A DNA stretch of 64,000 nucleotides from Octopus sinensis (GCF_006345805.1 NC_043005.1:69502001-69566000); one strand, 5' to 3'; shown: positions 6,498 through 64,000, counted from the stretch's first letter. The notes: generated from the letters alone by a model not told the origin. Numbers and translations: made by a program.

Positions 6498-6752
6498 ATA
6501 TATATATATATATATATATTATATATGTGTGTGTGTGTATGTGTGTCTGTACGTGTGTGTGGGGGGGGGCGTGTTTGTATGTCTGTGTTTGTCCTCGGAT
6601 GCTGGTGTGTTTATGATCCCGCAACTTAGCGGTTGGGCAAAAGAGACCGATAGAATAGGTACTAAGGTTACGAAGAATAAGTCCTGGGTTCGATTTGCTC
6701 GACTAAAGACCGCAGTCAAATGACTGAAACAAGTAAAAGAGTAAAAGATTAA
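6498..6752 (+). mobile_element. SINE family A, 3' half starting at its internal microsatellite
   Basis: GCTGGTGTGTTTA...AAAGAGACCGATAGAATA...CAAATGACTGAAACAAGTAAAAGAGTAAAAGA, matching the copies at 16818 and 17995. Confidence 0.9.
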
Positions 6753-8512: not shown

Positions 8513-11116
8513 AGATAAGAAAGTTTGTTTGGTAAAGCACGTGGGTGAATATATAAGAAAATAGTAAAGTGTGAAAAAACGACAGAAGGCTTAAATGTTA
8601 AAAAATATATATATTGTGTCAAAATGTCTGTAGAATATGGGAAAAATTTTTTCTCCCTTTCCTTAAAATGACATAATTTAAAAAATTTTTAAAGAAATTA
8701 CCGGTTTCGCGTGTAGCTTTTCAAATTTCTTGTGATGTTATGTTTATATTGCATGGAATTATCGTTGTTTTTATTTCCAGAAGATTTCTAAATAAGGGGA
8801 GGTAGTGAGTGATTTTTTCCGGTGTAGGGGAGATAATCGCTTACAAATTTTTTTTCCCTTTTCCTTGTTAATTTCTCTGTGTCAGTATGTTCGGATGGTT
8901 GAGTCTGGGTTTGTACTTTTCAATGAAGAATGTTTCCTTGTTCAGTCTCATTTGTGTTGATGATACGAAAGCACATTGGTAAAATGGGAAGATTAAAAAT
9001 TGTGGCAGTAGTTGCTTTGCGCATTTCTCAATGTGCTCACTAAAAGGTATCATTCTATATTCTGGGAATGCAATCTGTTGTCGATGCAGTGTGCATCTGC
9101 GCCTGAGTGATAGTCCCGTGGAGCCCACGTAGTCTTGGTGGCAGCCCGAGCATTTAATAACATAAATTATGTGTTCAGTCAGAGGCACAAGTAAAGTTAG
9201 ATTTGATCTTAAATTTCTGTCCCTCTTTAAAGAAGAATTCTGATCCTTCCAATAGGTTAGGACATGTTGCATAGTTCGATCTACCACATTTTTTTACTTT
9301 TGCATCCGTAATTTTAGAAGACAATTTTGCCTTTGTGAGAATCTTTTTAAGTGATTTAGGCTGTTTGTAGCTTTTAATGATTTGGTGTATGTTTAGAATT
9401 TCCTTTAATTTTGGGTTTTTATGAAGTATTGGTAAATTCTGGGTGATGATGGTGAAGGCTTCTTTGTTTCTGGGGTTGTATGTAGATATGTAAGGTAGTA
9501 TTTTCGGGGAAGGTGTGTTGTTGTGTTGAACTTTTCTTAAAGTTTCTTAAAGTTTCTATGTTGATTTCTGTTGCACGTCTGATCCCATCCTCTATGAGTT
9601 GAGCTGGGTAATGTCTGTCAATTAGGGTGTTTCGCAAAAGGGCTCAAATTTACACCAACTCCACGCAGAGCAAACCTAAATGAACTCAAGGATAATATAA
9701 CAGAATTTTGCAGAAAATTAAGACTAGCAGAAGCATCAAACAGTTTCAATACTGAAGATGAATCACTAGTCAAGAACAAAAGTGAACACATCCCACACAG
9801 AGGAAGAAATAAAGATCTTGACGAATTCTGTAACCACATTGAGAACTTCCCCTACCATACTATACATAAACAGAAAGCTAACCCAAATTTTAACACTACA
9901 CAATGGAAAGAACTGATAGAACTCAAAATGATGAAGATATAACCATTAAGGAAGCGGACAAGGGAATGCAGTTGTAATAATGGATACATCATACTACAGA
10001 AATCTTGTATTTCCTCCTGCTTGATGAAGACCTACATTATGAAAAAATTACCACTACAACACCCCACAAAAAATAATGAAAACTCTATCTTCACTAATTA
10101 AAACCCATGAAAAGGAACTGACAACCAAAGAGATTGATTTCCTAACAAACTTTAAATGCAACCTAGCCTTTTCTATGGTCTGCCAAAAATTCATAAAAGT
10201 CAAATTATAAATGAAACCATTAAAAAATCACCAAAGACATACATACACACACCTAATCCGGGGGACCTAAAACTACGACCCATTGTAGCTGGCCCAACCT
10301 GTGAAACACACAGACTAAGTCTACTTATGGACATCCTCTTGAAACCCTTCCTTAAACATATCGATAGCCATATCAAGATGACTTAGATATGTTAAACCAC
10401 CTCCCAAAAAAAACCAAGGAAGAAACAATCCTGGTTTCATTTGATGTAGTCAACTTGTATACCAGTATACCTCATAATTATGGACTGGAGGCAATACAAT
10501 TCTGGTTAGACCAATTTCCGGAAGAAATACCAAAAAGGATCAGTAAGGAATTCATTACTAAATCAATTGAATTCATCCTACACAATAACCACTTCATGTT
10601 TGACAATACATTTTACCGTCAAAAATCCGGAATTGCTATGGGTACAAGGGCAGCACCAGTCATTGCGAACTTAACAATGGGATACATGGAAATAATAATT
10701 TACCAGGAATCTCTATCAATCTTTGGAAACCCCTCTCTCAATACATAAAGAGAATTGGAAACGATTCCTAGACGATTGTTTCATTCTCTGGAATGAAAAC
10801 ATAGATAAACTCCTAAAATTTAAAAACCTATTGAACAGCATAAACCCAATATTCAGTTCACAATGGAATACAACCAAAAGGAGCTCCCGTTCTTGGATAT
10901 ACTAATTAAAAAATTAACCTTAAAATAGAAACAGACATTTTTTACAAGCCACAGACGCCAAACAATACCTTCTTTTTAATTCATGCCACCCAAGACACAC
11001 TAAAACAAACATCCCCTTCAACCTTGCAAGAAGGATATGCACAATAGTGTCAGAACAAAATACCAGGAACTTTAGCCTGCAAGAACTCAAAAACACCCTA
11101 ATTGACATACATTACC
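8513..11116 (-). mobile_element. Near-complete Neptune-type Penelope-like element with inverted 5' segment (RT on plus 9633-11116; thumb/GIY-YIG/pLTR on minus 9632-8513)
   Basis: Plus strand: KGLKFTPTP, EADKG, YGLPKIHK, LRPIV, SFDVVNLYTSIP, GIAMGT, RFLDDCF, LPFLD. Minus strand: NTLIDRHYP, KCGRSNYATCP, IIYVIKCSGCHQDYVGSTG...KYKPRLN. Several frameshifts. Confidence 0.9.
8692..8731 (-). ncRNA. Minimal type I hammerhead ribozyme motif with U3:A8 compensatory core
   Basis: Minus: AAGAAAT-TTGAAAA-GC[TACAC]GC-GAAA-CCGG-T-A-ATTTCTT. Stem I is 7 bp, G10.1-C11.1 is present, stem III is palindromic ACCGGT, cleavage triplet GUA. Lies ~140 nt downstream of the PLE stop codon. Confidence 0.7.
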
Positions 11117-11138
11117 TTTGTAGCTTTGTCGATTTGTA

Positions 11139-11447
11139 GCTGGTCGATTCAATAGACCCCAGTACGCAACTGATACTTAAGTTACCGACCCCGAAATTAT
11201 AAAAGGCAAAGTCGATCACGGCAGAACGACGAAATACCTATTTGTTTACTACCCACAAGGAGCTAAACACAGAGAGGACAAACAAAGACAGACAACCAAT
11301 TAAGTCGATTATATCGACCCCAGTGCGTAAATGGTACTTATTTAATCGACCCCGAAAGAATGAAAGGCAAAGTCGATCACGGCGAAATTTTAACTCAGAA
11401 CGTAGCGGCAGACGAAATACCGCTAAGCATTTCGCCTGTCCTGAAAC
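11139..11447 (-). mobile_element. Two adjacent SINE family B copies (partial 11139-11238; fuller 11260-11447)
   Basis: Both contain GACCCCGAAA...AAAGGCAAAGTCGA and ACGAAATACC blocks shared with 8235-8436. Confidence 0.85.
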
Positions 11448-12445
11448 GCAATATTGCATCATGAATGTTTTGATACTGATTTTACAGAATATTTATTTAA
11501 TCGATTAATGCTGACCTGGATATAACATTGCTTCCTTCCTACAAATTTATGAAGTCAAAGGATGTCTGAATCAGTATAGTCATTGCCATAATATTTTAAT
11601 ATATTTTCATATATCGTTATGTCCAATGTTAAATTATAGTCATTATATAGAACCAACCTCGAAGAGCACTAGTACCGTCAGACAGATCTACATTTTGAAC
11701 ATGTATTTAACAAAATCCTATTATAGGAACTATGAGAAGAAGAAATATATGTCGGTTATTAATAAGAACCTTTATGAATTTTTAAATAACGTTTAGAGTG
11801 TGAACTAAATATTAAAATCGATAATGTGAAAAAAAAATAAACAATAACAAACATTCTCTGCATGACGAAATGAAGGAAATAAAAATACGAAAGAAAAAAT
11901 AAAACTATGGAAGCGCTGATCCCTCTATAATATTGTGTATAATATTTAAAATTATTGATCGATATAAAGAACAATATAGCTGGGAATATTAGATGCATTT
12001 AACCCCTTTAAATATTACAGAAAATAATAATTAAATATCGATCTTTATAGATTAGTGAAGAATCCATATGCTGTGCATTGGAACGATAAATTGAACGAAA
12101 GTGTTGGAAACTTGTTGGTGAGAAGTGAATAAGGAAAACAGTGATTAATAAACAAAAATAACAATAAATCTGTATAAAATGGAAGAAGTAAATGTGTTTC
12201 TACTGAATGTGTGAGCAAATGAAGGAAATATATAAAGGGATAGACTAAATTGAAAACACTTCTGAAATGGAAAGTCGAGTCAATGAGAAAGTATATATAT
12301 TGATGAATTGAAGCACTGCAAGAAACAGAGGTCCGTGTATTTATAATACTACAATCAAGAATTGTCAGTAACGTACAGGGTAATATACATAATTTGGTTA
12401 AATGATGGCCCTAAAATGACAAGGAATACAACTGATGTTGGTCTA

Positions 12446-12482
12446 GCGCAGGAGTGGCTGTGTGGTAAGAAGCTTGCTAACC
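12446..12482 (+). mobile_element. 5' tRNA head of a SINE family A copy, interrupted by insertions
   Basis: GCGCAGGAGTGGCTGTGTGGTAAGAAGCTTGCTAACC matches the intact head at ~17996-18021; the rest of this SINE resumes at 16818. Confidence 0.85.
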
Positions 12483-14453
12483 TTGAAGGTGTTCGGACGT
12501 GTTTTTTAGCTGCTGCCGGATGTCACGTCTTTCGGCGTGAATTATTGAATTTTGAGACTCGACTACAGGTAGGCGTTTGCTGTACATTTTTAGGGGCTTA
12601 GTGAAGTTTATTGCTCTGTATTTATTATTTTTTGGAGAGTAATAGACTCCACTTTGCTCCTGATATTTTTCTGTCTGTGGTCGAGCGTAAAGACTCACTT
12701 TGCAGTGAGAATTGTGGTTTTGAGGAGGCGTAGCCCCCCCCTCAAAAATTAATTGCCTTTCTGTTGGATTTACCAAGAAGTACCAAGGATAACCAACAAC
12801 TGTTTTGGACGTTTGGCCAGGAGTGCCTTTTCGGCCATAAAAATTAATTCCTTTGCTGAATTTGAACTCTCTTCTTTCAGCTATCGTTTATTTTAAAATG
12901 AACTCTTCTGAACTGTTATTTTATTGTAATTCTTCTCTACTGTTATGTTTTCCCTTCTCCCTTTTGTATCTTATTTATTTCTTACACTTTTGAACTTTAA
13001 TTGAATTCCGTTTCGAAATGGCAAAGGAATTTATTGTGTGGGACCTAACATCTCCCAAAAAATATTTAAAAGAGCTGGAAAGGAAGACCGTGGTGTTGAG
13101 GACTTATTCGAAGTCGCTCGACAACATAGCTGTCTTCCCAAAGGCCACAATTTAAAACGAGCTGGCGGACTACATGCCAGCCGTTAAATTTATCTCACGG
13201 GGAGTGAAATACGCAACGGTCTGGCTGCTATTTGACTCCCCAAAAGAAGCTTGCGACTTTCCAAGCCATCCCCTTGAGGGCAAAGAAATATTGTTTCTCC
13301 CAAACTATATGGGAGAAAAAACTATTGAAGGCTTGGATCTGCGGCCTACCACCCGGAGTTGAGCCGGAGTGGATAGAGGACTCTATCCGCCGGGGTCTGG
13401 GTGGTAGCAGTGCAAAGCTGCTAAATGTAAAAATGTTGCCTGCGGCTGATTGGGAGGGGTCGAAAGCTGTTTTGACCCTATGGAACCAATCAGCCAAAAG
13501 TCTGGTTTTTCCAGATTTCTTGAGGATGGCCGGGTCCAGGTATCTGGTGATGCTTGAGGGCCCCCCACAAGTGTCGCTTGTGCCTGGAGACAGACCACAT
13601 TAAGAAGAACTGCCCCAGGGACCAAAGTAGGATCCTGGAGCAGTTAATGTTGGAATCTCTCCCTGCTCCCCCAATGGAGTGAGAGAAACAGAACGAGGAA
13701 ATTGCTACATCATAAAAAAAAAGAAAGATGGGCAATAATGGTGACCCACAGAAAGACCCGGGAGCTGCGGGAGAAAAAGAGGACCCGTTGTGTGCAACAC
13801 GGGAGCCTCGCCCTCCCGCGGCCCAGGAAAAAAAAGAAGAAAGAGAAACAGGACGCCGCCGGCGGATTGTAACACGCAGACGGCGTCTCCCAAGCTTCCT
13901 CAGGCGGGTATGCCGCCGGAGGATCAATATGTGGTCCTCTTCCACAAAGGACGAAAGCTTGAAAACGAGATAGGTAAAATGAAAGAGAAAGGCCAATGGG
14001 AGGGACTTTGGTCCTGCACGGAGGACCCTGAGTGGCCTTCGCAAGTGGCTGCGGAGGTCCTATGGGATAGCGATCTGTGCAGGATCGTGAATTCCTTCCC
14101 GGAGGACTCCTTTCAATATATACCTGAATGGCGCGGCCCGACAAAGAATGATTGCCTCATTAAAGCAAGAGCGCTGGTCGGCCGAGTGACTTGAACTTTT
14201 TGAATGTTTTAAAAAGAAAAATTGTATCATATTGAGAAAGAGGTTCATTGCCTCATTTTGACTTTTGTGAAATTTTGGACTTTGAATTTTTTGAAAAAAT
14301 GTACATTGTCTTAGAGAAGCGGAAGTCGGCGGGCGCTTTCGTCTTCTCACATCACCATCTTTGTTTCATCACCATCATTCATACCATCAATGTCTACGTC
14401 CAGTCCGCAAAGCTACATCTATGTACTGCCTTCATGGCAAATTTACTGAATAA
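12483..14453 (+). mobile_element. ORF1-only non-LTR retroelement, unit 1 (gag-like, CCHC knuckle, no RT)
   Basis: T-rich leader, disrupted ORF 13018-14194, conserved 3' tail 14310-14453 ending AATAAAA, bounded by target copies. Confidence 0.75.
13018..14194 (+). pseudogene. L1/Tx1-like ORF1 protein pseudogene, unit 1
   Basis: MAKEFIVWDL...RGVKYATVWLLFDSP...KAWICGLPPGVEPEWI...EG-PHKCRLCLETDHIKKNCP (CX2CX4HX4C at 13572-13613)...FHKG...TEDPEWPSQVA. Stop at 13153 plus frameshifts. Confidence 0.75.
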
Positions 14454-14469
14454 AAGTAGCTTGTTAACA

Positions 14470-16817
14470 GGTTGCTTCTACGCATGTGCAAGTCAATGTG
14501 GTGCTGGACACCGAAGATGTAAGACGTGTTTTTGAAAGCCGTCTTAAATTGAATATTTTTGAATACTCAGCCGTAAGGTAAGAATTTTGGGGGTCTTGTG
14601 GGGACCTGTTTTATGTTGCAATTTATTTTTACAAGCAACAAGTCTTCACTGAGCTCTTGTCTGCCGCAGGCTGAGTGAAAATATTATTCACTTAATTGTG
14701 AAAATTATTGGTTTGGTAGGCGTATCCTGCCAAACTTTCGTTAAAGTTGGAATGATCTTTTAACTGTTTTCTTAAATTTTGGCCGTAACAGTGAATTGAG
14801 AATTCTTCTTGTGAATTCTAGTGGGCGTATCTCGCAAGAAAACTATAAGAATAAGCCACTTGGATTACCCTTTTGGATTACCTTTTGGACAAATTTTTGT
14901 GGAAGTTGTGTTCCAGTTGCGGCGTTCCAGGTTCAAATTAGGCCGGGAGTACCGTAAGGCCAGAAGATTTTTGCTGTGTTTTTGCTGTTTATTGACTTTC
15001 TTTTGAACTTTATTTAACACCCCTTTTTGTTTGTTTTTTTTTGTTTATTATGACTTTCCGTTGATTTCTTCCCTTCTGTTGTGCTTTCTCCTTTTTGTAT
15101 CTTCCCTATTTTTTCAAAAAAATCTTTCGAATTTTATTTGGACTTTTTTCTTCTCGCGTTTTAAGTTTATTTTGAATATATTTAAAAAAACAAAACAAAA
15201 CATGGCAATGAAAAATGACAAAATTTTGGAATGGGAGATTATACCGCCTAAAATGTGGTTAAAAGACCGTGAAGATAGGACGGTGGTGTTGAGAACCTAC
15301 TACAAGCCACTCGACAGCATCGCCCTATTCGAAAAGACGGCAATTGAAAAGGAGTCGGCAGGGTATTTGCCAACAATTAAGTTCATTTTCAGGGGTGTCA
15401 GATATGCAACGGTGTGGTTGCTATTTGACACCCCTGAAGAGGCAAATTAGCAAGTAAACCCCTGGAGGGTAAGGACATTTTATTTCTGCCCACGTACCAT
15501 GGGAAGAGACTGACGAAAGCTTGGATCTGCGGGCTGCCACCCGGGATAAAACCCGAGTGGATAAAGGAGAGTATCCACCGGGGTCTGGGTAGCAGCGGAA
15601 CTAAGCTTCTTAATGTGAAAGTTCTTCCTGCGGCTGTTTTGGTTGGGTCAAAAGCAATTTTGACCCTTTGGACCCAATCAGCCAATGTGGTTCTTCCAGA
15701 TTTTTTGAAAATGGCCGGGTGATACTTGAGGGTCACCCCGCTAGGTGTCATCGGTGCTTGGAGTCCGGCCATATAAAGAAAAACTGTCCCCGGGAACAAA
15801 ATAGGATCCCGGAGCAGTTAAGTGAAACCCCTGTAGAAGAGGGAATGAAGACGGCTGAAGAAGCGGAGGACTCCTCAAACAGAGGCCGAAAGGGGAAGGT
15901 GAGCAACAATGGGTGCTCACCAAAGGATACTGGGGATGAGGAGCGAAAGGCGAATCTTCCGGCCGCAGAGGAGACGCACCCTCCCTCAGTTGAAAAGAAA
16001 AAAAAGAAAAAAGAGGAAGAGAAACGGGACATTACCGGCAGTCGGTGACATAGTACCAGAATGTCCCGGAACTACGTCGGTTGGGGTTGTGCCACCGACA
16101 GGAGAAGAAACACCGTTGGTGGGAACTGTGCCGCCAACGAAGAATTGAATATCCCGCCCCCGAGGAAAAACGATGTATTGATCCTCTTCCATAGAGGCGG
16201 AGAGATTGAAAAGGTGATGGAAAAGCAACATAAGGGAGCACCTTTAGCCTTCACACAGGACCGCGAATGGCCTCAGCAGGTAGCTGTGGAGGCCGTGACG
16301 TTCGACGTGACGCTTGGGCTGAAGGAGCTCAATGAGGATTATAGCTTGGTCCCGGCGACGCTAACACGGAACTCGATTACATTCTGAGGGAGGCGTGGTG
16401 GATGACGGAGGGTGCGGGCACAAGTTATTTTGAGGACGAGTCATAAATTGTGATACGACTTGAGGGGCCCCGACCTAGAGCTGACGCATTCCTAAGGGAA
16501 TGTAAGCCAGGTCTGGGAGGAGGGGCTTGGTGTATTGTATTTATATCATATGTAATCATTGAACTATGTTGTTGTTAGTAATGTACTGTTAAGTCCAAAA
16601 ATTGAAAAGTTGTAAAAATTGTAAGAGGTTTAATACCTCGTTTTGTGTTTGTTTTTAAAAGAACAATGTTTTAGAGAAGCAGAAGTCGGCGGGCGCCTTT
16701 TGTCTTCTCCCATCCCCATCTTTCTTTCATTATCCTTCATTTCATTAATGTCCTCGTCCAGCCCGCAAAGCTAACTTACTCTATGCACTGCCTTTAAGGC
16801 AAATGTTATGAAATAAA
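14470..16817 (+). mobile_element. ORF1-only non-LTR retroelement, unit 2 (divergent paralogue of unit 1)
   Basis: Same architecture as unit 1; 3' tail 16670-16817 is homologous to 14310-14453; bounded by target copies. Confidence 0.75.
15202..16387 (+). pseudogene. L1/Tx1-like ORF1 protein pseudogene, unit 2
   Basis: MAMKNDKILEWEI...RGVRYATVWLLFDTP...KAWICGLPPGIKPEWI...EGHPARCHRCLESGHIKKNCP (CCHC at 15746-15787)...FHRG...TQDREWPQQVA. Several frameshifts. Confidence 0.75.
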
Positions 16818-17207
16818 TAGCTTGCTAACCAACCACAAGGTTCTAGGTTAAGTCCCACTGCGTGGCATCTTGGGCAAGTGCCTTCTGCTATAGCCCCAGG
16901 CCGTCCAATGCCTTGTGAGTGGATTTGGTAGACGGAAACTGAAAGAAGCCTGTCGTATATATATATATATAAATATACATGTATAGGTGTGGGTGTTTGT
17001 GTGTCTGTGTTTGTCCTCCTAGCATTGCTTGGCAGCCGATGCTGGTGTGTTTACGTCCCCGTCACTTAGCGGTTCGGCAAAAGAGACCGATAGAATAAGT
17101 ACTGGGCTTACAAAGAATAAGCCTTGGGATTGATTTTCTCGACTAAAGGTGGTGCTCCAGCATGGCCACAGTCAAATGACTGAAACAAGTAAAAGAGTAA
17201 AGAGAGT
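16818..17207 (+). mobile_element. Remainder of the interrupted SINE family A copy
   Basis: TAGCTTGCTAACCAACCACAAGGTTCTAGGTTAAGTCCCACTGCGTGGCATCTTGGGCAAGTG... with internal microsatellite and AAGTAAAAGAG tail. Confidence 0.9.
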
Positions 17208-17994
17208 GAGTAGACAGAGAGTTTCCGAATGGACAAAAATAATAATTTTAATGAATTATACACACACACACATACAATCACAAACCTAGGTATATTGAAA
17301 ATAAATTTAACTGATTACGTAAATATTATATGACGCAAGTAAGTGGAAAATCCTGTCTGAAATACACTGTTAGGATAGTAACTCAGATAAAAATGAAATA
17401 AAGTACGTGTAAATGAAAAATATGCTTCACTACATTTTATTAGGCGATGTAACAATAAGTCTCAGCAATTTTAATACTAATGAACGAAATGATGACAAAG
17501 GAATATTTTTAGAAATAAAAGAAACATTGTGACAAAGCAAGCATTTTTGACGCAGTGGAATGAAATAAATGAATACATATTCGAATACTGAAGAAAAACA
17601 GGTAGGGGAAAAATACTGTTGGTTGTAAAGGAGAAATTAGGGGAGAGATAGGAAAAATTGTTGCGTTTAGAATTAAAAACAAATAATATAGTCTCAAAGC
17701 AGAACTTATGAGTTGCAAATAAAATAATAGGTAAAATAAGAGGATTTGGATAAAATATAATGAAAGCATAGACGTGGAGCAAATAAAAATAACTAAAGCA
17801 ATTTTTGCAACATCTAATTATTGCTGCAGTATTTCATAATTGGGTAACATATCAACTTTGATATTTTTCTTGCGTAAATGTTCATTGCTGATCGCTATGA
17901 TAGATAAACGTCTTATATTTAGAGAGATATCATTGGAGTAATGAAAAAAATTATCTGAAGGTGTGAGAAAATGATGTATAAGAAAAATATAATT

Positions 17995-18178
17995 CGCTGT
18001 GTGGTAAGTAGCTTGCTTACCAATCACATTGTTCTAGGTTCGGTTCCACTGCGTGGTACCTTAGGCAAGTGTCTTCTTCTAGGATCTCGGGCCGACCAAA
18101 ACTTTGTGAGTGGATTTGGTAGAGGGAAACTGAAAGACGCCCGTCGTGTGTATGTATGTATGTATGTATGTATGTATG

Positions 18179-18270
<92 letters not shown>

Positions 18271-18470
18271 TTGTTCCCTCAACATCACTTGACAACCGAT
18301 GCTGGTGCATTTACGTCCCCGTAATTTAGCGGTTCCGCAAAACAGACCGATAGAATAAGTACTAGTCTTACAAAAAGTCCTGAGGTCGATTTGCTCGGCT
18401 AATGGCGGTGCTCCAGCACGGCCGATGTCAAATGACTGAAACAAGTAAAAGAGAGAGTAAAAGAGAGAGT
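17995..18470 (+). mobile_element. Uninterrupted SINE family A copy
   Basis: Head GCTGTGTGGTAAGTAGCTTGCTTACCAATCAC, B-box-like GGTTCGGTTCC, internal (TATG)/(TA)/(TG) tract at ~18148-18272, AAAAGAGAGAGT tail. Confidence 0.9.
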
Positions 18471-21289
18471 ATAGCAAAATGAGATTTGTAAAATTAAAGC
18501 AGAAGAACTTTATAAATAATACGATATTAAAGGTGTGAAAGTAAAAACAATAAAACTGTGATTTCTAAACTGTTCTACTGAAAAGGTCAACAAAATGAAA
18601 TGTATAGTGAAACGTAAATGAAGCAAAAAAAAAAACACAGAACGGTGATATTTAGAGTAAGAGACACACAGAAGGAATTACAAATTAAGTAGAAGGATTA
18701 AAGGAAAATGTATGAAGAGAGTTTTCAGACATAGATGTTATTGAAAGAAAAAGGTAAAAATAAAACATTTACCTGAAGAACTGCAACAGAAGAATGGATA
18801 ATTAAGCGCACATTGCACAAAAGAATCAGACGATGCAGAAATTATGACTGAGGGAGAGAAACTGAAAATATAGCATGTTACTGAATTTATTAAAATGAAC
18901 ACAGATGTTTTATGCATATATATATTGCAAAAGTTATAACCAATGTGATCTTAACGATTAGTGTGGATGCTGTTCGAAACAGACAAATTAGAATACTAAC
19001 TGACCATAGGTCTCATAAATCTTGACTGGTGTAGGGACAAGAAGATGATATATAACGAAATGTTTGAATATAATTTATAGAAAATAAAACAAAAGAACAA
19101 GAATAAAGTAAGGAAATAATAGATGAAGAAACGAATATGTAGAGTGGAATATGGTAAAGGAGTAATTTAGAATAAAGTTTAATAATTGTTTCATTATAGG
19201 TGAAGCCTAGGTGAAAGACAACTAGAAAAACACAAAGATTTATGGAAAAATACCGACAGAAAATATTCATAGAAAATTATAAAATATCCAATCAGTTACA
19301 AAATAATTTAGGTGGTAGAATTTGTATAATGAGGTAAAATATTTCGCAAAAAGGTAAGGGCAATTTAAGATATATATTAAATGATTGATATGTAGGCATC
19401 CTTCTCAGAATCCAGAACAGTAAGACTGTTAAAACAAATGCAGGATGGCTTCCAGATATCAGGCCACATGACACTAATGCTGTAGAAGTGATAACAGCTA
19501 CATTCTCCATTATGGGTGCCTCGTGCTGAGACAGATTTTTCACAGTTTAATGCCAGCAATTACACGGCAGCATGCAGCATATTGTATACAGTAATTTGAA
19601 TTCCTTGTATTACGGTTGGTTAGGATTTTGGCACGTGTCAGTCGTTTATGTGAGCAATCTTAACATCAATCTTTGCGTGGTAATATCTAATCACAATGTA
19701 GTTATTGCCCATAACACATCAATGTCTTTAACAATACAGCTAACAGTAATTATAAGGATCCAGGAAATATGTCCGATGATATAAGGGAGCATCACAGTGT
19801 CATGAAGAACGAGATCTCCAATTTATCGATAATATATCGAGCTTCACTCGATGGTCATGAATGCCAGTAGCAGAATATTTAATTTCACTGCCTAAATTTT
19901 GAAAGTCATTGGATACAATGCTAGGTTCATCGTGCAACTAAATGTGTATAAATATGTATGCATCTCAAAACCTCCTCGGAAACAAACACAACTGAATAAT
20001 AACTGAAAATGCGCCAATTCTTCACCCTTGACTCTTAGTTAATTCCCCGACTCTTTTCTTTCCCTATCTACACTGTTCCTTTCCTTACCTCCACGGCCCA
20101 GACTGTTTTCGACCCCTCCATTTATTCTTACCTTTGTCTCCTCTTTATAATTTTCTTCGGGGATCAACTTAATAATGTTCACTGAAAGTCGTCGTTTGTT
20201 ATTAATTTGCTTGTATACACACATACACACACATACACAAATATACATACATAAACGCACATAATCACAAACATAGATATGTATATGGATAGAGAGATAG
20301 AGATGAATAGATTGATATGCATTTATTCTCCAACTATCACACCTACCACTTTAAAGGATAAGTTCATGGTAAAGAGCATCATCTTTCAGCGTGTCTTACA
20401 TAGGATATTTGGCCACATCTATCATTTTTGCAAGCAGTGGAATATCATTAGAAATAATAAGCCTAGCAGTATTTTGCGTCACTGAAAATCGTCATTAGGT
20501 TTAATTCACGGCGTATCTTACTTTAATCTCCTTGAAAAGAACATAATAATTTCATTTTGATTTTAGTCCACATTTAAAGATGTTTCCCTTGGAAACTTTT
20601 CAATTATTACACATTCGGATTTTAGAAGAAATTATATCTGACCAATAACAATATATAGCTGTTGTGATTGTTGTCATGTAGAATTATAGAATATTATCTT
20701 CTCCAGAACAGCAATATCTCCTGGATCTCACAAACTACAAAATTCTTAGACTATATTTGGTTATGATATTTTGAGTAAGCGGTTTTTAATTCCAGATTGT
20801 CTAATGTTGACATAGTGATATGCACAAACTCCTAGTGATTGGACATGCTTTATACGAAAATATCTCTTAGCATTTCTCGAAAAATGATTTGTGGATTTAA
20901 AAATGATTTTGTATTTTAGATAAATATGAAGATATTCAATTTCTTCACATTATAACAATAATCCATTTGTGAAATATATATCAATATATGCCGATATGCA
21001 AGAATTTATAATAGAGATAATATATACTTTCCAAGTTATTGCAATTTAATGAGTGTAAAGAAATAAACTCTGTTTCATATTTCATAAGAATGCTGTAATT
21101 CATTGCATAATCTAATTCCTAAAGGCACTAATATTAAGAGAAAATATTATGTGTCAAGATACAAAATAATTTCTCTTTACTGAAAAACATATTTTAGAAC
21201 GTGTATATACGTGTGTTTATATGTGTGTATCTACGTATATGCAAGAATGCTTACAGATACACGACATTCACTCGTACACAAATATATGT

Positions 21290-45029: not shown

Positions 45030-45260
45030 GAGGTACTTTTCTACAACATGCTTCTGGATTCAGTTCCACTGCATGTAATCTAGAGCAAGTGTCTTCAGTT
45101 ATAGCTTCGAGCCGACCAAAGCCTTGAGTAAGGATTTCATAGATGGATTCCCACTAGCGCCGGATAACCGCTGTAGGTGTGTTTACGTTCCCTGTAATTT
45201 ACTAAGTTCCCATAAAAAGACCGATACAATAAGCACCAGACTTAAGAAGGAATTACTGGT
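45030..45260 (+). mobile_element. Old, diverged SINE family A copy
   Basis: GGATTCAGTTCCACTGC...GAGCAAGTGTCTTC...GCCGACCAAAGCCTTG...GGTGTGTTTACGTTCCC...AAAGACCGATACAATAAG. Confidence 0.7.
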
Positions 45261-46104
45261 GTCGATTCTTCTAGACAGTACTTCATCATGGCTGCAGTCT
45301 GATGACAGAAATATGTAAAGGATAAAACTTGTGTATGTGTGTTTGTTCATTGTATACAAATAACATGGAATAAATAAATAAATAGTTACTAGAGTAGAAA
45401 AAATCTGCATAAGTTCCAAAGACATTGCAGCTTATAAAGGTAGCAATTCCAGGGTTAAGTGAAATGTTTTTGTATAACATAGATAAATTAAGAAGTAGAG
45501 TCAAACGCAAATGTTACACAAGTCTGAATACTTCCGATATATATTTCGAAGAAAAACATTCATATTATTCAGGAGGGTATAAAATGATGTAAAGCAATGT
45601 AATCATATCGTCAGGGAAAAAGAGAGAAACAAAACACATTCATAAGCCATTTTAACCGAATATGATTACCGCATATATGATGAAAGGGAACTCAGGCGTT
45701 TTTTTTTTCTTATTAAACTGCTAATAGATTTAACGTCACAGGTAATTTAAAAAAATAGAAAGAAAGAAAATAACAGAAAATTAAGATAGGAGAAATATAG
45801 TGTGAAAGATGAAGGGGGGAAAAGCGTGATACCTGAATGGGAAAAAAGCTTAAAAGCATGGAAATAGATATATGTAGTGGAAATGAAACGTAAGAAGACA
45901 TTTATTGGTCGAATTTATAGATCGGTAGAAATTACTTAGAGGAACTAGAGGCATGTTTTTGACATTGCTTACGATATACACGTTATTTAAACGTGTTTTC
46001 AAGAATATTCTCTGAGAATATGATAAGAAATTGTTCTTCGGTACAGAGAGGAGAAAAAAGATTTACCTTTATCATATGAAAGGGATTCAAATTATATTCA
46101 AACA

Positions 46105-54797: not shown

Positions 54798-54894
54798 ATA
54801 TATATATACTTACTTTGATACTTTGATAGGTTTCGGCCATTATTGGCCCAGGCCATGTCTAACTTAATAGCACCACCTGGTGAAGTCTTTCAAG

Positions 54895-57800
54895 TCAGAA
54901 TTTGGGCACTATGGCCCACTCAAGTAGAGAGTTATTGTTTACAGAGACATATCCAGGTGTAGGGGGTTTATCCGGGATTTCTTGAAGGAATCTGTCCAAA
55001 GACTTCTTGAACCCTATAGGGTCATTTCTGTTTTAATGTGTTTTGGTGTAATGTTAAAGAGAGCGGGGCCAATTGAGGTGAAATAATTGTGCCGTATTGT
55101 TGTTATGAGATGAGAGTGCGATTTTTGTTTTGGGCGGATGGCACGGGGCCCAAGCCTTGGATGTACCTTAAAGGTGATGCCAACATCATTTGGGCAATGC
55201 TGATGGAATATTTTCCACATCATGCAGATGATGTAGCGCTCACGACGACGTTGGAGAGAATAGTTTTAGCTTTTCTAGCCGACCCCAATAGTCGAGGCCT
55301 GTCATGTCATCTATCTTTTTTGTGATTGCCCTTTGAGGTGCTTCAACTTTTATGATACCTTGTATTGTGTGGGGAGACCACAGTGGACAACAGTATTCAA
55401 GGTGGGGTCGGGCAAAAGTGGAGAAGAGAAGGATAATGGTGTGGATATCTCTCGACTGGAAAGTTCTGAGAATCCAGGAACACATTCTGCGGGCCATGTC
55501 AACTTTGGTGTTTATATGAGTGGCCCAGCTTACGTTGTTGTCCACAATTACTCCCAAGTCTCTGATGTTGTTGGACGCCGCGAGAGTTTCACCTGAAGGA
55601 AGGGAGTATGGGAGTTTCAGGGCATCATCTTTTCCAAAGTGGATTAGCTCAAATTTATCCTCGTTCAGCAGCATATTGTTTTTTTCTGCCCATTGGATAA
55701 CAGCCAGTAGATCTGACTGAAGGCATGTCCGGTCACTCGCCTCATTTATGACCTTCTGTAGCTTGGAGCCATCTGCAAAGATTTTTATGTTGCTGTGCTT
55801 GATGATGTCATTAATGTCATTAATGTAAATGATGAAAAGAAGTGGGCCCAGCACAGTGCCTTGCGGAACGCCACTACTGACTTTGGCTGGGCTTGATTTT
55901 ACCCCTTCAACTACAACATGTTGAGATCTGTCTGTCAGGAAACACTTAATCCATTTTCAGTAACTTTCCAGAGACACCAATGTTGGATAGTTTTTTCAAT
56001 AGGATCTTGTGATCGACCCTGTCGAAGGCCTTACTGAAATCAAGGTAGATGACATCGGTGTTGGAGCCCTCTCCCAAAGCTCTCAAAATGTCCTCACAGT
56101 GATGCAGGAGCTGCGTTAGGCAGTCCCTTCCATTACGGAACCCATGTTGGTTGGAGATCAGCCGTCTGTTGCTTTCCAGAAATTGGGTTATTCGAGATCT
56201 CACCACCCTCTCAAATACCTTGATGATATGAGAGGTGAGTGAGATTGGGCGGTAATTCACTGCAAGGGACTTGTTTCCCTTTTTGAAAACTGGGACAACA
56301 GACTGGGACAGAAGGTTTTTTGGAATATAGCCAGCATCCAGTGAGTTTCTCCACAGATTAGCAAGGGGAGATGCAAGTTGGTGTCGACACACCTTCAGGA
56401 CACAAGCAGGGAACCTATTGGGGCCTACTGCTGAATTGTGTTTTATTTCGTTTATCGCCGCTAAGACATCAGGGGCACTAAACGTTATGTCCGATATAGT
56501 GTGTTGGGGGTTGACATCACTGATACAGCCCAGATCGGCCATATCAGGATTGCTGAAAACAGAGCAGTATTGTTTCTGCAGTATCTCGGCCATGGATTTG
56601 GCATTATCTTGGAGAGTGCCAGTTTCATCAATTAGAGGGCCTACAGTGGAGACAGTGACCCTGCGTTTCCTCGCAAATGAAAAGAACACTTTGGGGTTGA
56701 GTTTGATTTTTTCAATGGCCCACTTCTCCTCAGCTGATCTTTGGTTATTGATGAGGGTCTTCATGCATTGTTGGAGGTTATATTTTTTGGATTCAAGCAG
56801 TGCGATAGCCGTCGAATGTGTGTGTTGCTGTTGGCAGTACTTTAGTTTGTTAATTTTTTTGTTTGTTCTTTTTATTTTTCTGATAATGGTTTTTCTGTTT
56901 TGGGGGATTCTGCACTTTTTGTTCACAGGTCTTGGTGGGGAGTGTTTTGCACATATGTCTGTGACGGTGTCTACAAAGATCTGCCAAGATGTTTTATGGT
57001 TGGTGGAGATGTGTGTATGTATAAAGGACCAGTCAACATTTGATAGCTCGTTCCTGATTGCATCCCAGTTGGCTTTATGGAGATCCATGTTGTCAAATGG
57101 GTGGGCTGGAGGAAGGTCACTAGGATTAGCTTTCGGCTGGTGGAATTTCATGTTACAGAGAACCATGTCATGGTCTGAAAGAAGGGTTTTTTCCACTGTA
57201 ACGTTATGTATAGTGTAAGTGTGGTTACTAAACACTAGGTCCAAAATGTTCTGATGTCTTGTTGGTGCAAGGACAAGTTGGGACAAGAAAATCTCATTCG
57301 TAAAGTCGAAAAGTGACTCTGCTGCTTCTTTGTCAGCGGTTGAGGCGGGAGTGCTTGGTTTCAAACAGTTTGTAGTCCAGTCAACACAGGGTAGATTGAA
57401 GTCTCCCATCATGAGTATGTTGCTAGAATGGCACTGTTGAATAAAGCACTTAATGCTGTTGAGGCATTCTTTAAAGCACAGTATGGGTGTTTGGGGCGGC
57501 CTATAGAGCCCAATTACTGTCAGGTCATTGGCTTTGTTGTGCACGGTGACTGATTCACAGTAGCCGTTGGAGAATATACTATTTCCATCTGCCGTAAATG
57601 AATCATGCAGGAAAATGGCAGTTCCACCCTTCCTCCTGCCGATACGATCCGCGCGGATGGTTGTGAAATTCTTCACTCTCACTTCGCCTTCCAAGTGGGA
57701 GTTGTCAAGGTGGGTCTCAGTGAGAATGAAGAAAGGGATGTGGTGTGAATGGTTACCAACCCAGTCTTCAATGAATTGGACCTTCCATTTTTGTGCATTG

Positions 57801-57928
57801 ATGGAAGGGCTGACACCTTGTGCATTGAGTAGGAATGTGGAGGTTAGTGTAGTGGCTGGTTTTGACTGTTGCAGGGGGCTTGGATTTTTTGTGTGTGTTA
57901 GTGGCAGCAATGTGGGGAATTGGTGCAC
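54895..57928 (-). pseudogene. CR1 ORF2: AP endonuclease plus reverse transcriptase, frameshifted, catalytic motif reads FADG
   Basis: LTETHL, YRPP, GDFNLP, ILDLVF, SDH; YRPISLTS, QHGFR, YLDFSKAFD, GVPQGTVLGPLLF, IFADGSKL. Indels near 55955, 55250, 55025 and 54965. Confidence 0.92.
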
Positions 57929-58906
57929 TGGGGTAATAGCATAGGATGGTGCTGAGTGATGGCTAGAATGTTTTTGTGTATCTCTTTTGCCATGTTCAAC
58001 ATGGCTAAAAAAGAATTTTCCTGCTTAGGGAGCAGTTTTTGGCTGGAGGTGTGGTTGCACTGTTGGATAGGGTTGTAGTTTCCACTTTTGTTGTTGTTGT
58101 TTTTGTGTCTTCCTGAAAAGACTGGACCAGCATTACTGCAGCATGGTGTGTTTCTATTTTTATTGTTATTCAGGTTTGTGTGTTGGCTTGAGGCCCCGTT
58201 TCTGTTTGTGCGTCGGGTCCCTGGAAGATGAGTGAAGGGACAGTCACTCAGTAGACATGTTCTCTCACGTTGGGAATACCGGCAGATTTTGGGACTCCGA
58301 GTTGTGCGTGTTTTGAATTTCGATTTACTATTTGGTGGTGTTGATGTTATTGTGGGATGCGTGCTTTGGCCTTGGCCGGTAGTGCGTATAGTGCCGGGTA
58401 GATGCGTGAAGATGCAGTCACTATTTGTGCAGAGTCTCTGGCGCAGTGAATAGCGGCATATTGGGGATTTCTTGTTTGTGCCGTGGGGGGCGCATTCTGC
58501 TTCCTATGTTTCTTTAAGTTTTTGTTACTGCAGTAGTATTGAGGTGGTGATGTGGGGGAAGAGGGCAGTGGTTTCTTATTGGTTTTCTGTCGGTATTTTT
58601 GGTGATAGAAGACGATGGTGGCAGCGGTGGTGATGATGATGATGATAATTGTGGTGGTTGCTGTGAGAGCGGTGAAAAGATACTGGCATTTAGTGAATCG
58701 TCTAGTAAGCTAGAGTTGAGGAGTGGCTGTTGTTGTTCTTGTTGCTGTGGCTGTTGTTGTTGTTGTGCCTGACCGATGTCAGGGTCAGCCATTGTGCTGG
58801 GAACCAGGAGTGGCTCATTCTGTTGTTGTTGTTGTTGTGGCTGCTGATTTTCTAGCTGTTGTTGTTCTTGACATTTAGATTTTCTGTTTGGGAAAGAGAG
58901 AGCCAT
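57898..58906 (-). pseudogene. CR1 ORF1: Gln/Pro/Ser-rich N-terminus and two CX8CX4CX3H zinc fingers, frameshifted near 58510
   Basis: Frame 58503-57898 (absent from the ORF track) encodes ICRYSLRQRLCTNSDCIFTHLPGT (58458-58402) and ICRYSQRERTCLLSDCPFTHLPGT (58284-58228). Confidence 0.8.
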
Positions 58907-62849: not shown

Positions 62850-63330
62850 TTGTCTGCATAATCTAAGCATGCACAGACTGAATTGTGATTTTCCGTCACA
62901 TCGCGGCTACTAACCACCCGAAAAAATCAAGCGGCTTGCATTTCCTCTTGTATTAGCTGCCGAGTTCTTGCCTTGTTAACGTAAGGAATCCTTGTTGTTG
63001 GCATTAAAGTAATGGTCGATGGCTATTCTTGTCAGCAGCACGACGATCGGAACACAACTTCTAATTGCTTCTTCTAGTTTACTAGCTAAATGTTCTTCTA
63101 ATGCATTTCTCTCTATCACTTTGCCGTTAGTAAATGCTATCGTTAATTTCACTTTGCAGTGCTTTCTATCACCTGTTATTCGCTATTGTACCTATCAATT
63201 GTCTCTTAACCAGCTCGCTAATGTGGTTTCGGTGGTCTTTTCAGGTCATAAATCACGCGTCTGTCTCCCAATAGCTAGTTCCCTGCCTAAGAGTTCTATC
63301 TAAGGTGACCGTGGATACCAAAAATTACCA
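62850..63330 (-). mobile_element. Possible LTR-retrotransposon gag/PBS remnant
   Basis: Minus CKPLDFSG near 62940 and TGGTATC near 63313-63319 (partial match to a Met-tRNA PBS); weak evidence only. Confidence 0.2.
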
Positions 63331-64000
63331 ACCTGCGAATCCGAATACATTGAATTGAGGACACCCTAATCTACCTTAGTCGTTTAACCTATCAAAATAC
63401 TACAACTACCATCTGGAAGACACATCGCGGTAGCTCCTAGTTCAGAACGCACATTCGGGAAATCCAGTCGATACCTGTTTGACAGTTGTAAAAGTCTGAG
63501 GATCGTTTCTAGGTTTCTGTATTGCCCTCATTGGGTAACCCTACACAATCCCATCATAATCCCAAATAATCTCCATTTCACTACCAGTACTAAAGACACG
63601 AATCTTCCTTGTAAGTTGACTGCCTCTAGTCTGAAGTCATTGCCTTTACTGTCACTCAAATTTAGTATCACCAATTTACCTGGTCGAATCGAGGATGATC
63701 ACATGAATATCTAAGCCCAAAACTTTCCGACCATAAGACGAGTACGTGTTATAATTGTCAAACATCGAGCTGAATGCCTTCGTCCCGGAAATTCGGGCTT
63801 CCATACCAATGGCTACCATATCAAGGTCAGAGTACCTGCGGTCGTTGAACAAGTGAACTTGCTTCGAAGCACACTACAGATCATCGACATTGATACATCT
63901 TATTCTATTATTGGAAAAATTAAAGGAAGAATTCATTCACCTACGTCACTTTGAGGCATTTAGAGTGGCGGATGGTCTGTGATCTATCGAGGTGGGTGTT

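What the first reader, a model, noticed from the sequence alone, without database searches (positions are those of the whole stretch)
12446..17207. Two divergent ORF1-only retroelements stacked at one exact site in a SINE tRNA head: candidate SINE/tRNA-targeting non-autonomous family
Seen: SINE head (12446-12482), unit 1, target copy, unit 2, target copy, then the rest of the SINE. The target occurs three times: AAGAAGCTTGCTAACC (12467-12482), AAGTAGCTTGTTAACA (14454-14469) and AAATAGCTTGCTAACC (16815-16830). The uninterrupted SINE at 18001 shows the empty site (AAGTAGCTTGCTTACC-AATCAC). Each unit has a T-rich leader, one gag-like CCHC ORF, a conserved 3' tail and AATAAA, with no RT or endonuclease. 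The units are far more diverged from each other than the target copies are, which argues for two independent insertions rather than a tandem duplication. Known: Tx1-clade elements are sequence-specific (U2 snRNA, tRNA clusters, microsatellites, other transposons), and ORF1-only half-L1 (HAL1) elements exist. Inference: a site-specific ORF1-only family mobilised in trans, using an abundant SINE (or the parent tRNA) as a safe harbour. I do not know of a described example in molluscs.
Basis: partly seen in the sequence, partly recalled or inferred. Interest (0 to 1): 0.88.

Follow-up and report, generated by a model that had tools for sequence, protein, structure and literature searches.

The report
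ORF1-only retroelements homing to SINE
Two long-diverged members of a small octopus retroelement family, which encodes only an RNA-binding protein and no copying enzyme, inserted separately at the same nucleotide of one SINE repeat, which suggests a parasite-of-a-parasite that homes to that site.

Summary
A SINE is split at 12482/16831 by two head-to-tail units, U1 (12483-14453) and U2 (14470-16814). Three copies of a 16-bp target bracket them, and joining the flanks restores a gapless SINE.

The conclusion is still right. U1 and U2 differ by dS about 0.98 with dN/dS 0.22, so they diverged as live lineages. The host SINE is only about 10% from its consensus. U2 is 86% identical to a copy on another Octopus sinensis chromosome but only 73% to U1.

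Each unit has a leader, one broken ORF (two RRM-like domains plus a CCHC knuckle) and a conserved 3' tail with a hairpin. Neither has an endonuclease or reverse transcriptase. Distant ORF1 relatives belong to full-length LINEs with L1-like ORF2.

All four copies I could reach, at three loci, follow the same SINE head in the same orientation. The 5'-complete copies also carry a target-like motif of their own.

Target specificity is therefore likely, but it rests on four copies. Both O. sinensis copies lack their 3' ends, and no autonomous partner was found. I read this as a new variant combining HAL1-like and Tx1-like behaviour.

The parts
12446..12482 (+). 5' head of the host SINE, ending at the insertion point
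   Evidence: Aligns to the first ~37 nt of other SINE copies (window 17996, L002 5838, 7586). Joined to 16831 onward it restores a gapless SINE.
12467..12482 (+). Target copy T1 (AAGAAGCTTGCTAACC), the left target-site duplication of U1
   Evidence: Shares the host-specific A in GCT[A]ACC with T2 and T3.
12483..14453 (+). Unit 1 (U1): an ORF1-only retroelement copy. It is 5'-truncated by roughly 40-55 nt relative to U2 and L002. Leader 12483-13017, ORF 13018-14194, 3' region 14195-14453.
   Evidence: No RT or EN.
13018..14194 (+). U1 ORF1 remnant, with 3 in-frame stops and at least 3 frameshifts. CCHC knuckle at 13572-13613.
   Evidence: Three-frame translation. Alignment with P0001 and U2.
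14297..14453 (+). U1 conserved 3' tail. Hairpin at 14314-14348, a small GCC-N5-GGC hairpin near the end, and terminal AATAAA.
   Evidence: 79% identical to the U2 tail, against 58% at third codon positions. Hairpin dG -17.7 kcal/mol, z -3.7. One compensatory pair between U1 and U2.
14454..14469 (+). Target copy T2 (AAGTAGCTTGTTAACA), shared by the 3' side of U1 and the 5' side of U2
14470..16814 (+). Unit 2 (U2): an ORF1-only retroelement copy from a different lineage. Leader 14470-15201, ORF 15202-16387, 3' region 16388-16814. It begins with its own target-like motif GGTTGCTTC.
   Evidence: 86% identical in the ORF to the O. sinensis copy in L002.
15202..16387 (+). U2 ORF1 remnant, with stops, frameshifts and a 13-bp deletion. 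CCHC knuckle at 15746-15787.
16657..16814 (+). U2 conserved 3' tail. Hairpin at 16674-16709, terminal small hairpin and AAATAA(A).
   Evidence: dG -15.9 kcal/mol, z -2.4.
16815..16830 (+). Target copy T3 (AAATAGCTTGCTAACC), continuous with the rest of the SINE
16831..17207 (+). Remainder of the host SINE: body, internal microsatellite and 3' tail
   Evidence: 88-90% identical to O. sinensis SINE copies. About 10% from a rough consensus.
17996..18453 (+). Neighbouring uninterrupted copy of the same SINE, showing the empty site (AAGTAGCTTGCTTACC at 18006-18021)

Best explanation
U1 and U2 are dead copies of two long-separated lineages of one octopod retroelement family. The family keeps only the ORF1 of an L1/Tx1-type LINE, plus a 5' leader and a conserved 3' tail. 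ORF1 has two RRM-like domains and one CCHC knuckle.

Shown:
- The two copies entered the same position of one SINE copy in two separate events, in the same orientation. Each event made a 16-bp target-site duplication, which leaves three target copies.
- ORF1 evolved under purifying selection between the lineages.
- The tail is conserved above the neutral level and folds into a hairpin.
- The units have no RT or EN.
- Every other retrievable copy also follows the same SINE head.

Inferred mechanism:
1. ORF1p coats its own RNA.
2. The ORF2 protein (APE endonuclease plus RT) of a related autonomous LINE recognises the shared 3' tail in trans.
3. It nicks the bottom strand of the SINE head at GGT^AAGTAGC.
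4. It primes on the ...AAUAAA end, helped by the TAAG microhomology.
5. It cuts the top strand 16 bp downstream, after ...T(T/A)ACC.

The 5' end is then joined in one of three ways: by annealing of the element's own target-like motif (A/G)GNTTGCTTC to the target (L001, L002), by plain end joining (U2), or after 5' truncation (U1). The SINE copy is split between its A-box-like and B-box-like parts, so the site costs the host nothing.
For: Independent insertions:
- U1 versus U2: p = 0.267, by codon position 0.207/0.170/0.422. dN 0.218, dS 0.98, dN/dS 0.22.
- The host SINE is about 0.10 from consensus. An in-place duplication could give at most about 0.2, and that divergence would be flat across codon positions.
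- U2 versus L002 (another chromosome of O. sinensis): p = 0.139. U2's unique changes are about 6.5% and flat across codon positions.

Real insertion into the SINE:
- Gapless empty-site reconstruction.
- Three target copies sharing a host-specific base.

Same site elsewhere:
- L001 9455-9490 and L002 15700-15737 carry the complete SINE head directly before the element, in the same orientation.
- U2 carries GGTTGCTTC immediately after a complete T2. This motif is homologous to L002's GTTTGCTTC and matches the SINE's AGCTTGCTT at 8 of 9 positions.

ORF1-only:
- No RT or EN in the units.
- The same architecture is seen in U1, U2 and L002.

LINE ancestry:
- 55 distant relatives. Wherever a source names the organism, it is an octopod.
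- The Argonauta relative is followed by Exo_endo_phos + RVT_1 + zf-RVT. Its ORF2 is colinear with human L1 ORF2p, E 4e-42, and it has a 16-bp TSD.
- The ORF1 relative on the Logan contig is followed by the start of a second ORF whose first residues look like the beginning of an endonuclease domain; this was read by eye and not tested.
- RRM topology in the structure model, and only tandem-RRM proteins among the Foldseek hits.

Tail:
- 79% identity against 58% at third codon positions.
- Hairpin z -3.7 and -2.4, with one compensatory pair.

Precedent:
- Tx1-clade LINEs target other transposons, and their dependent SINEU-3 shares the target (PMC4494074).
- HAL1 is an ORF1-only L1 derivative (PMC5753468).
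- L1-Tx1 families are active in O. vulgaris, and SINEs make up 11.6% of that genome (PMC13282606).
Against: - Only four copies at three loci could be examined.
- The two O. sinensis copies were found through predicted proteins. Both lack the 3' tail and the SINE remainder, so their 3' junctions cannot be seen.
- In those two copies the SINE head merges seamlessly with the element's own target-like motif. The two heads also share two derived characters: C at head position 9, and loss of the A in GCTTACC. The head may therefore have travelled with the element rather than marking a new hit.
- No autonomous partner with the same tail, leader or ORF1 was found.
- Clade assignment rests on distant ORF1 relatives (22-25% identity), not on an RT.
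- The Argonauta relative is not in a SINE.
- The structure model has low confidence overall (pLDDT 52).
Confidence: 0.6

Rival explanations
1. The SINE head is part of the element, not its target. It would have been picked up once, by read-in transcription from a source copy sitting in a SINE or by reverse-transcriptase template switching onto SINE RNA at the shared AGCTTGCTT microhomology. Full-length copies would then carry it anywhere. The double hit in the window would reflect local homing: an incoming RNA whose 3' end pairs with the resident copy's end or with the duplicated target, without recognition of SINE sequence genome-wide.
For: - L001 and L002 heads share two derived characters absent from free SINE copies.
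- The element's own 5' motif is homologous between U2 and L002 and differs from the SINE in the same way: GCTTC(C/T)AC against GCTTACCAAC.
- Neither O. sinensis copy is followed by the SINE remainder.
- Co-transcription with the target, and heads captured from targets, are known for Tx1-related elements (PMC4494074).
Against: - In the window the array sits in a genuine SINE with a gapless empty site and host-specific target copies. At least one clean insertion at this site, from outside, is therefore certain.
- U1 lacks the motif and the head, yet is flanked by T1 and T2.
- A captured head ending at this position itself implies that an ancestral copy sat at the same site.
- All three heads start at the SINE's first base. 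That is natural for insertion into SINE copies. It is hard to explain by transcription, because the B-box-like part lies beyond the insert and the leader is full of T runs.
Confidence: 0.2
2. A SINE that once received one insertion became a long composite SINE and spread as a whole using the SINE's own 3' tail. On this view all head-element junctions are identical by descent, and the tandem arose by unequal exchange between two composites.
For: All copies have the head in the same orientation and at nearly the same break point.
Against: - The 5' junctions differ in structure. U1 is truncated by about 40-55 nt. U2 has only 16 bp of head plus its own motif. L001 has extra sequence.
- ORF1 was under purifying selection for dS about 1, which a passively carried insert would not show.
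- An exchange between non-allelic composites would rearrange the chromosome.
- The three target copies share a host-specific base.
Confidence: 0.07
3. One insertion followed by tandem duplication or unequal crossing-over between its two target copies, with later decay.
For: - The three target copies and the head-to-tail order are what such an event would give.
- The target copies are not significantly better conserved than the units.
Against: - dS 0.98 with dN/dS 0.22 between U1 and U2.
- The host SINE is only about 10% from consensus.
- U2 is far closer to L002 than to U1.
- The leaders differ by large indels and U1 is 5'-truncated.
Confidence: 0.03
4. Assembly artefact: two copies from different loci joined through the shared 16-bp target or SINE sequence.
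For: The region is repeat-rich, and the joins fall in repeated sequence.
Against: - A 16-bp overlap is far too short to mislead an assembler.
- The units are 27% diverged.
- The three target copies share a base not seen in other SINE copies.
- No reads were available to test this directly.
Confidence: 0.03

Closest known systems
HAL1 (half-L1) of mammals
   Same: A non-autonomous LINE derivative that keeps ORF1 and the element ends and has lost ORF2 (PMC5753468). Here too ORF1 stayed under selection while the family spread.
   Different: HAL1 derives from mammalian L1 with a Type II ORF1p (coiled coil-RRM-CTD), has a poly(A) tail and inserts without sequence specificity. These units have a Type I-like ORF1p (RRM-RRM-CCHC), no poly(A), a structured tail and an apparent fixed target.
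Target-specific Tx1-clade LINEs (Tx1L in Tx1D, Keno in U2 snRNA genes, crocodilian Tx1-Mar in Mariner-N4_AMi) and their dependent SINEU-3
   Same: They insert at a fixed position of a multicopy sequence, including other transposons. A non-autonomous dependant shares the target. Transcription may depend on the target, or carry target sequence with it (PMC4494074). The ORF1 type, RRM + CCHC, is consistent with Tx1 (PMC5203782).
   Different: Those are autonomous elements or short non-coding SINEs. Here the dependant is a 2-kb protein-coding ORF1-only element and the target is a SINE. Membership of the Tx1 clade could not be tested because there is no RT.
R1/R2-type rDNA-specific LINEs
   Same: Homology between the element RNA ends and the target is used for precise joining, and the element is co-transcribed with the target (as summarised in PMC4494074).
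   Different: Different clades and endonucleases, an rRNA gene target, and autonomous elements.
Full-length octopod LINE in Argonauta hians (L003 about 9807-15247)
   Same: Homologous ORF1 (E about 1e-10). A 16-bp target-site duplication. No poly(A) tail. The tail ends in a small GCC-N5-GGC hairpin followed by AATAAA.
   Different: It encodes APE + RT + zf-RVT. It is not inserted in a SINE. Its ORF1 is only about 22% identical.

Membership tests
Non-LTR retrotransposon of the L1/Tx1 group | ORF1p of Type I: one or more RRM domains plus a CCHC knuckle | tested here: met
   The CX2CX4HX4C motif is present in U1, U2, L002 and most relatives; in P0001 the first Cys is replaced by Phe. Pfam zf-CCHC is weak in the units and above threshold in relatives. 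The model shows a beta-alpha-beta-beta-alpha-beta fold at residues 27-98, and all Foldseek hits are tandem-RRM proteins. The model has low confidence overall.
Non-LTR retrotransposon of the L1/Tx1 group | ORF2 with APE endonuclease and reverse transcriptase | tested here: not met
   No RT or EN in any frame of 12446-17207. They are present only in distant relatives. The units are therefore derivatives, not autonomous members.
Non-LTR retrotransposon of the L1/Tx1 group | Marks of target-primed reverse transcription: target-site duplication, intact 3' end, variable or truncated 5' end | tested here: met
   16-bp duplications around both units. The 3' ends are the same in both. The 5' ends differ, with U1 truncated.
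Tx1 clade specifically | RT phylogeny placing the element within Tx1 | not testable with these tools
   The units have no RT. The partner was not found. No reference RT set was at hand.
HAL1-like ORF1-only non-autonomous LINE derivatives | Encodes ORF1p only, and that architecture is shared by the family | tested here: met
   U1, U2 and L002 share leader-ORF1-short 3' region. Between lineages dN/dS is 0.19-0.25.
HAL1-like ORF1-only non-autonomous LINE derivatives | Shares its ends with an autonomous partner that supplies ORF2p | not tested
   No partner is present in the window or in L001-L004. The octopus genome could not be searched by DNA.
Target-specific non-LTR retrotransposons | Most copies lie at the same position and in the same orientation of one target sequence | tested here: inconclusive
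   4 of 4 copies at 3 loci follow the same SINE head. Only 2 of the 3' junctions are visible, both in the window. The sample is too small and partly ambiguous.
Target-specific non-LTR retrotransposons | Endonuclease with sequence-specific cleavage of the target | not testable with these tools
   This needs the partner's ORF2 and a cleavage assay.
tRNA-derived SINE (the host element) | Head recognisable as a tRNA, with A and B boxes | tested here: inconclusive
   No ARAGORN or Rfam tRNA call on any copy. A-box-like and B-box-like motifs are visible by eye. Octopus SINEs are reported as tRNA-derived (Ohshima and Okada 1994, cited in PMC4824008).

The most novel reading that the evidence does not exclude
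This is a protein-coding, ORF1-only LINE parasite that homes to one nucleotide position in the head of an abundant SINE. It carries a copy of the target at its own 5' end to guide joining. That makes three layers of dependence: the unit uses a LINE's enzyme and a SINE's body. Several lineages would have been maintained under selection for a long time in octopods.
Probability: 0.45. Interest if true: 0.65.

Novelty: new variant of a known kind. Interest (0 to 1): 0.5.

Why it matters
If the specificity holds genome-wide, three things follow.
- An ORF1-only element can inherit and keep a partner's target specificity.
- A SINE can serve as a safe landing site for another retroelement.
- ORF1p is worth keeping even when the enzyme is borrowed.

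It would also give a compact natural system, about 2 kb with a defined 16-bp target, for studying how APE-type LINE machinery finds a sequence. Finally, it would flag at least two O. sinensis gene models as transposon-derived.

Tried and rejected
- Further copies could not be obtained. Exact-pattern scans of metagenome and viral contigs with the conserved tail 25-mer found nothing. A protein-guided scan of metagenome contigs gave 289 pattern matches, none confirmed.
- A window ORF (16061-16387) is not on record in any assembly, so the source genome and its orthologous loci could not be reached.
- Three word-indexed protein searches returned only P0001, P0002, P0010 and P0003. Other relatives from the exhaustive search could therefore not be placed in genomic context.
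- A sensitive search for the tail or SINE remainder downstream of the L001 and L002 copies found only an unrelated SINE tail fragment at L001 20720-20775.
- A PDB sequence search with the ORF1 profile matched only the zinc knuckle.
- Rfam found no ribozyme, tRNA or other family in 12000-18600. The miRNA hits lie in microsatellite.
- The LINE at window 54.8-58 kb was rejected as the partner, because its tail is unrelated.
- Tandem duplication was rejected on codon-position evidence.
- The order of the two insertions could not be resolved from the target copies.


Full report
**What is there**

The window is octopus-like DNA. The only close protein relatives are from Octopus sinensis. The SINE copies are 88-90% identical to O. 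sinensis copies.

At 12446-17207 a SINE is interrupted after ...GGTAAGAAGCTTGCTAACC (12482) and resumes at AACCACAAGG (16831). Between these points lie U1 (12483-14453), a 16-bp copy of the target (T2, 14454-14469), and U2 (14470-16814). T3 (16815-16830) is continuous with the rest of the SINE.

The target pattern occurs four times in the window: the three copies and the intact SINE at 18006. Shuffles give 0.77 expected. Head plus remainder aligns without a gap to four other SINE copies. All three target copies have A in GCT[A]ACC where every other SINE copy has T. All three therefore descend from this one SINE.

**Are the two units one event or two?**

The test fails. The targets show 8 mismatches in 48 compared positions. 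The units differ by 0.21-0.27 per site. This gives P = 0.075-0.30.

Three better tests all point the same way.

- Codon positions. In the frame of the intact O. sinensis ORF, U1 and U2 differ by 0.207, 0.170 and 0.422 at codon positions 1, 2 and 3. dN is 0.218, dS is 0.98 and dN/dS is 0.22. They diverged while the protein was under selection, that is, as live lineages.
- Age of the host. The host SINE is only about 10% from a rough consensus. Two dead copies made in place could differ by about 20% at most, and evenly over codon positions.
- Closest relative. U2 differs from a copy on another O. sinensis chromosome (L002) by only 0.139, but from its neighbour U1 by 0.267. U2's unique changes are about 6.5% and flat over codon positions.

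Tandem duplication is rejected. These are two insertions, from two lineages, at the same nucleotide.

**What the units are**

Each unit has four parts:
- a leader of 0.5-0.7 kb;
- one ORF of about 390 codons, now broken by stops and frameshifts;
- a short non-conserved stretch;
- a conserved tail of about 155 bp ending in AATAAA, without poly(A).

No RT or endonuclease is present in any frame. The same leader-ORF-3' region layout is seen in L002 as far as that copy goes.

The ORF has a CX2CX4HX4C knuckle. A structure model is poor overall (pLDDT 52). Residues 20-100 score 70-88 and show the beta-alpha-beta-beta-alpha-beta order of an RRM, followed by a second similar domain. All top Foldseek matches are tandem-RRM proteins. 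This is the Type I ORF1p layout, which is described as consistent with the Tx1 group (PMC5203782).

An exhaustive profile search found 55 distant relatives. Wherever a source names the organism, it is an octopod: O. bimaculoides, O. sinensis, O. vulgaris or Argonauta hians.
- The Argonauta relative is ORF1 of a full-length LINE. Its ORF2 has Exo_endo_phos, RVT_1 and zf-RVT and aligns end to end with human L1 ORF2p, E 4e-42.
- That element has a 16-bp target-site duplication and no poly(A). Its tail ends in a small GCC-N5-GGC hairpin followed by AATAAA, like U1 and U2.
- A second relative, on a Logan contig, is followed by the start of a second ORF that looks by eye like the beginning of an endonuclease domain.

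The units are therefore ORF1-only derivatives of an L1/Tx1-type LINE. This is the arrangement known from mammalian HAL1 (PMC5753468).

The tail is 79% identical between U1 and U2, while third codon positions are only 58% identical. It holds a 14-bp hairpin with dG -17.7 and -15.9 kcal/mol and z -3.7 and -2.4. One G-C to A-U compensatory change separates the two units. The likely role is recognition by the partner's reverse transcriptase. That is an inference from two sequences.

**Is the family specific for this site?**

Only two more copies could be reached, both through O. sinensis gene models.

- In L001 the element is preceded by GGCTGAGGCATGGCTGTGTGGTAAGTAGCTTGCTTCC.
- In L002 it is preceded by GGCGCAGGCGTTGCCGTGTGGTAAGAAGTTTGCTTCC.

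In both cases this is the complete SINE head, in the same orientation, broken at the same place to within a base or two. The flanks are unrelated. All four copies, at three loci, are thus tied to this site. In the sampled DNA such a SINE head occurs roughly once per 20 kb, so repeated chance hits at one nucleotide are not credible.

The independence of these hits is less clear. U2 begins, right after a complete T2, with GGTTGCTTCTAC. This is homologous to L002's GTTTGCTTCCAC and matches the SINE's AGCTTGCTT at 8 of 9 positions. The element therefore carries target-like sequence at its own 5' end.

In L001 and L002 this motif merges seamlessly with the SINE head. Their heads also share two characters not seen in free SINE copies. 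Two readings fit:
- the cDNA end annealed to the target, as in rDNA-specific elements (summarised in PMC4494074);
- the head was carried on the RNA from a source copy sitting in a SINE.

Both readings imply earlier occupation of the same site. Under the second reading, however, L001 and L002 are not fresh hits.

Both O. sinensis copies have also lost their 3' ends and the SINE remainder. Only the two 3' junctions in the window can be read...CTGAATAAA|AGTAGC and ...ATGAAATAA|ATAGC.

I put target specificity at about 0.6-0.65.

**Mechanism proposed**

Shown:
- two separate insertions with 16-bp duplications;
- a selected ORF1;
- a conserved, structured tail;
- no enzyme genes;
- a target-like 5' motif.

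Inferred:
1. A related autonomous LINE supplies ORF2p in trans.
2. Its endonuclease nicks the bottom strand at GGT^AAGTAG.
3. The RNA end ...AAUAAA primes there with TAAG microhomology.
4. The top strand is cut 16 bp downstream.
5. The 5' end is joined by homology (L001, L002), by end joining (U2) or after truncation (U1).

The insertion separates the A-box-like part of the SINE from its B-box-like part.

**Comparison and novelty**

Tx1-clade LINEs are known to target U2 genes, microsatellites and other transposons. A dependent SINE, SINEU-3, shares its partner's target (PMC4494074). HAL1 shows that ORF1-only derivatives can spread (PMC5753468). L1-Tx1 families are active in O. vulgaris, where SINEs make up 11.6% of the genome (PMC13282606).

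My literature searches found no ORF1-only target-specific element and no LINE-type element with a SINE as its fixed target. That is a limited search, not proof of absence.

I file this as a new variant of a known kind. Membership of Tx1 proper is untested, because the units have no RT.

**Limits**

- Only four copies were examined.
- No partner was found.
- No reads were available to confirm the assembly.
- The source genome was not searchable by DNA.
- The SINE's tRNA origin is not confirmed by ARAGORN or Rfam.

Noticed in passing
window 12575-12585 and 14575-14585; L001 9583-9592; L002 15836-15845: All four leaders keep a consensus splice-donor-like motif (A/C)A(A/G)|GTA(A/G)G about 100 nt from the 5' end. 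A long T-rich tract follows, with acceptor-like YnAG shortly before the ATG (for example tctttcag at 12883-12890, ttttaag in U2 and L002, ctacaag in L001). The leader may be a retained 5'-UTR intron, which would be unusual for a LINE-type element.
   Followed up: partly
window 54800-58000, minus strand (ORF 55946-57928, 660 aa; ORF 55240-55854): A separate LINE with Exo_endo_phos_2, Exo_endo_phos and RVT_1 domains. Its 3' end is unrelated to the U tail, so it is not the partner.
   Followed up: partly
window 63172-63396, minus strand: A short fragment 40% identical to the Argonauta L1-like ORF2. It is probably another LINE remnant.
   Followed up: no
L001 10001-10846 and L002 10001-36638: Two O. 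sinensis gene models are built on copies of this retroelement: LOC115225585 and a 'K02A2.6-like' protein. The second splices the first 46 codons of ORF1 to an integrase-like region about 20 kb away. It is probably a chimeric annotation.
   Followed up: partly
L003 about 9807-15247 (Argonauta hians BAAFZT010000045.1): An apparently near-intact L1/Tx1-like LINE. ORF1 is 527 aa. ORF2 is split into 812 aa and 291 aa parts (APE, RT, zf-RVT). It is flanked by the 16-bp duplication TCTTCAACTTATGTTT.
   Followed up: partly
L002 11438-12441 (minus strand), next to the SINE at 12518-12892 (minus strand); L001 2-379: Fragments 44-51% identical to the Argonauta ORF2. One lies directly downstream of a complete SINE. 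The L001 fragment ends in AATAAAGAAAT, like the Argonauta element.
   Followed up: no
window 18137-18270: A long (TGTA)n/(TA)n/(TG)n microsatellite sits inside the neighbouring SINE. It gives sub-threshold Rfam miRNA hits (mir-297, mir-3149, mir-1277), which are artefacts of the repeat.
   Followed up: yes
window 6598-6745 and 45168-45326: Further diverged 3' fragments of the same SINE family, 79% and 69% identical.
   Followed up: no
L001 9476-9530: The L001 copy carries the target-like motif twice: TAGCTTGCTTCC, and 15 nt later TAGTTGCTTCCACAC. The two flank TGTGCATGCGTTGAT. This 5' end is more complex than those of L002 and U2 and remains unexplained.
   Followed up: partly
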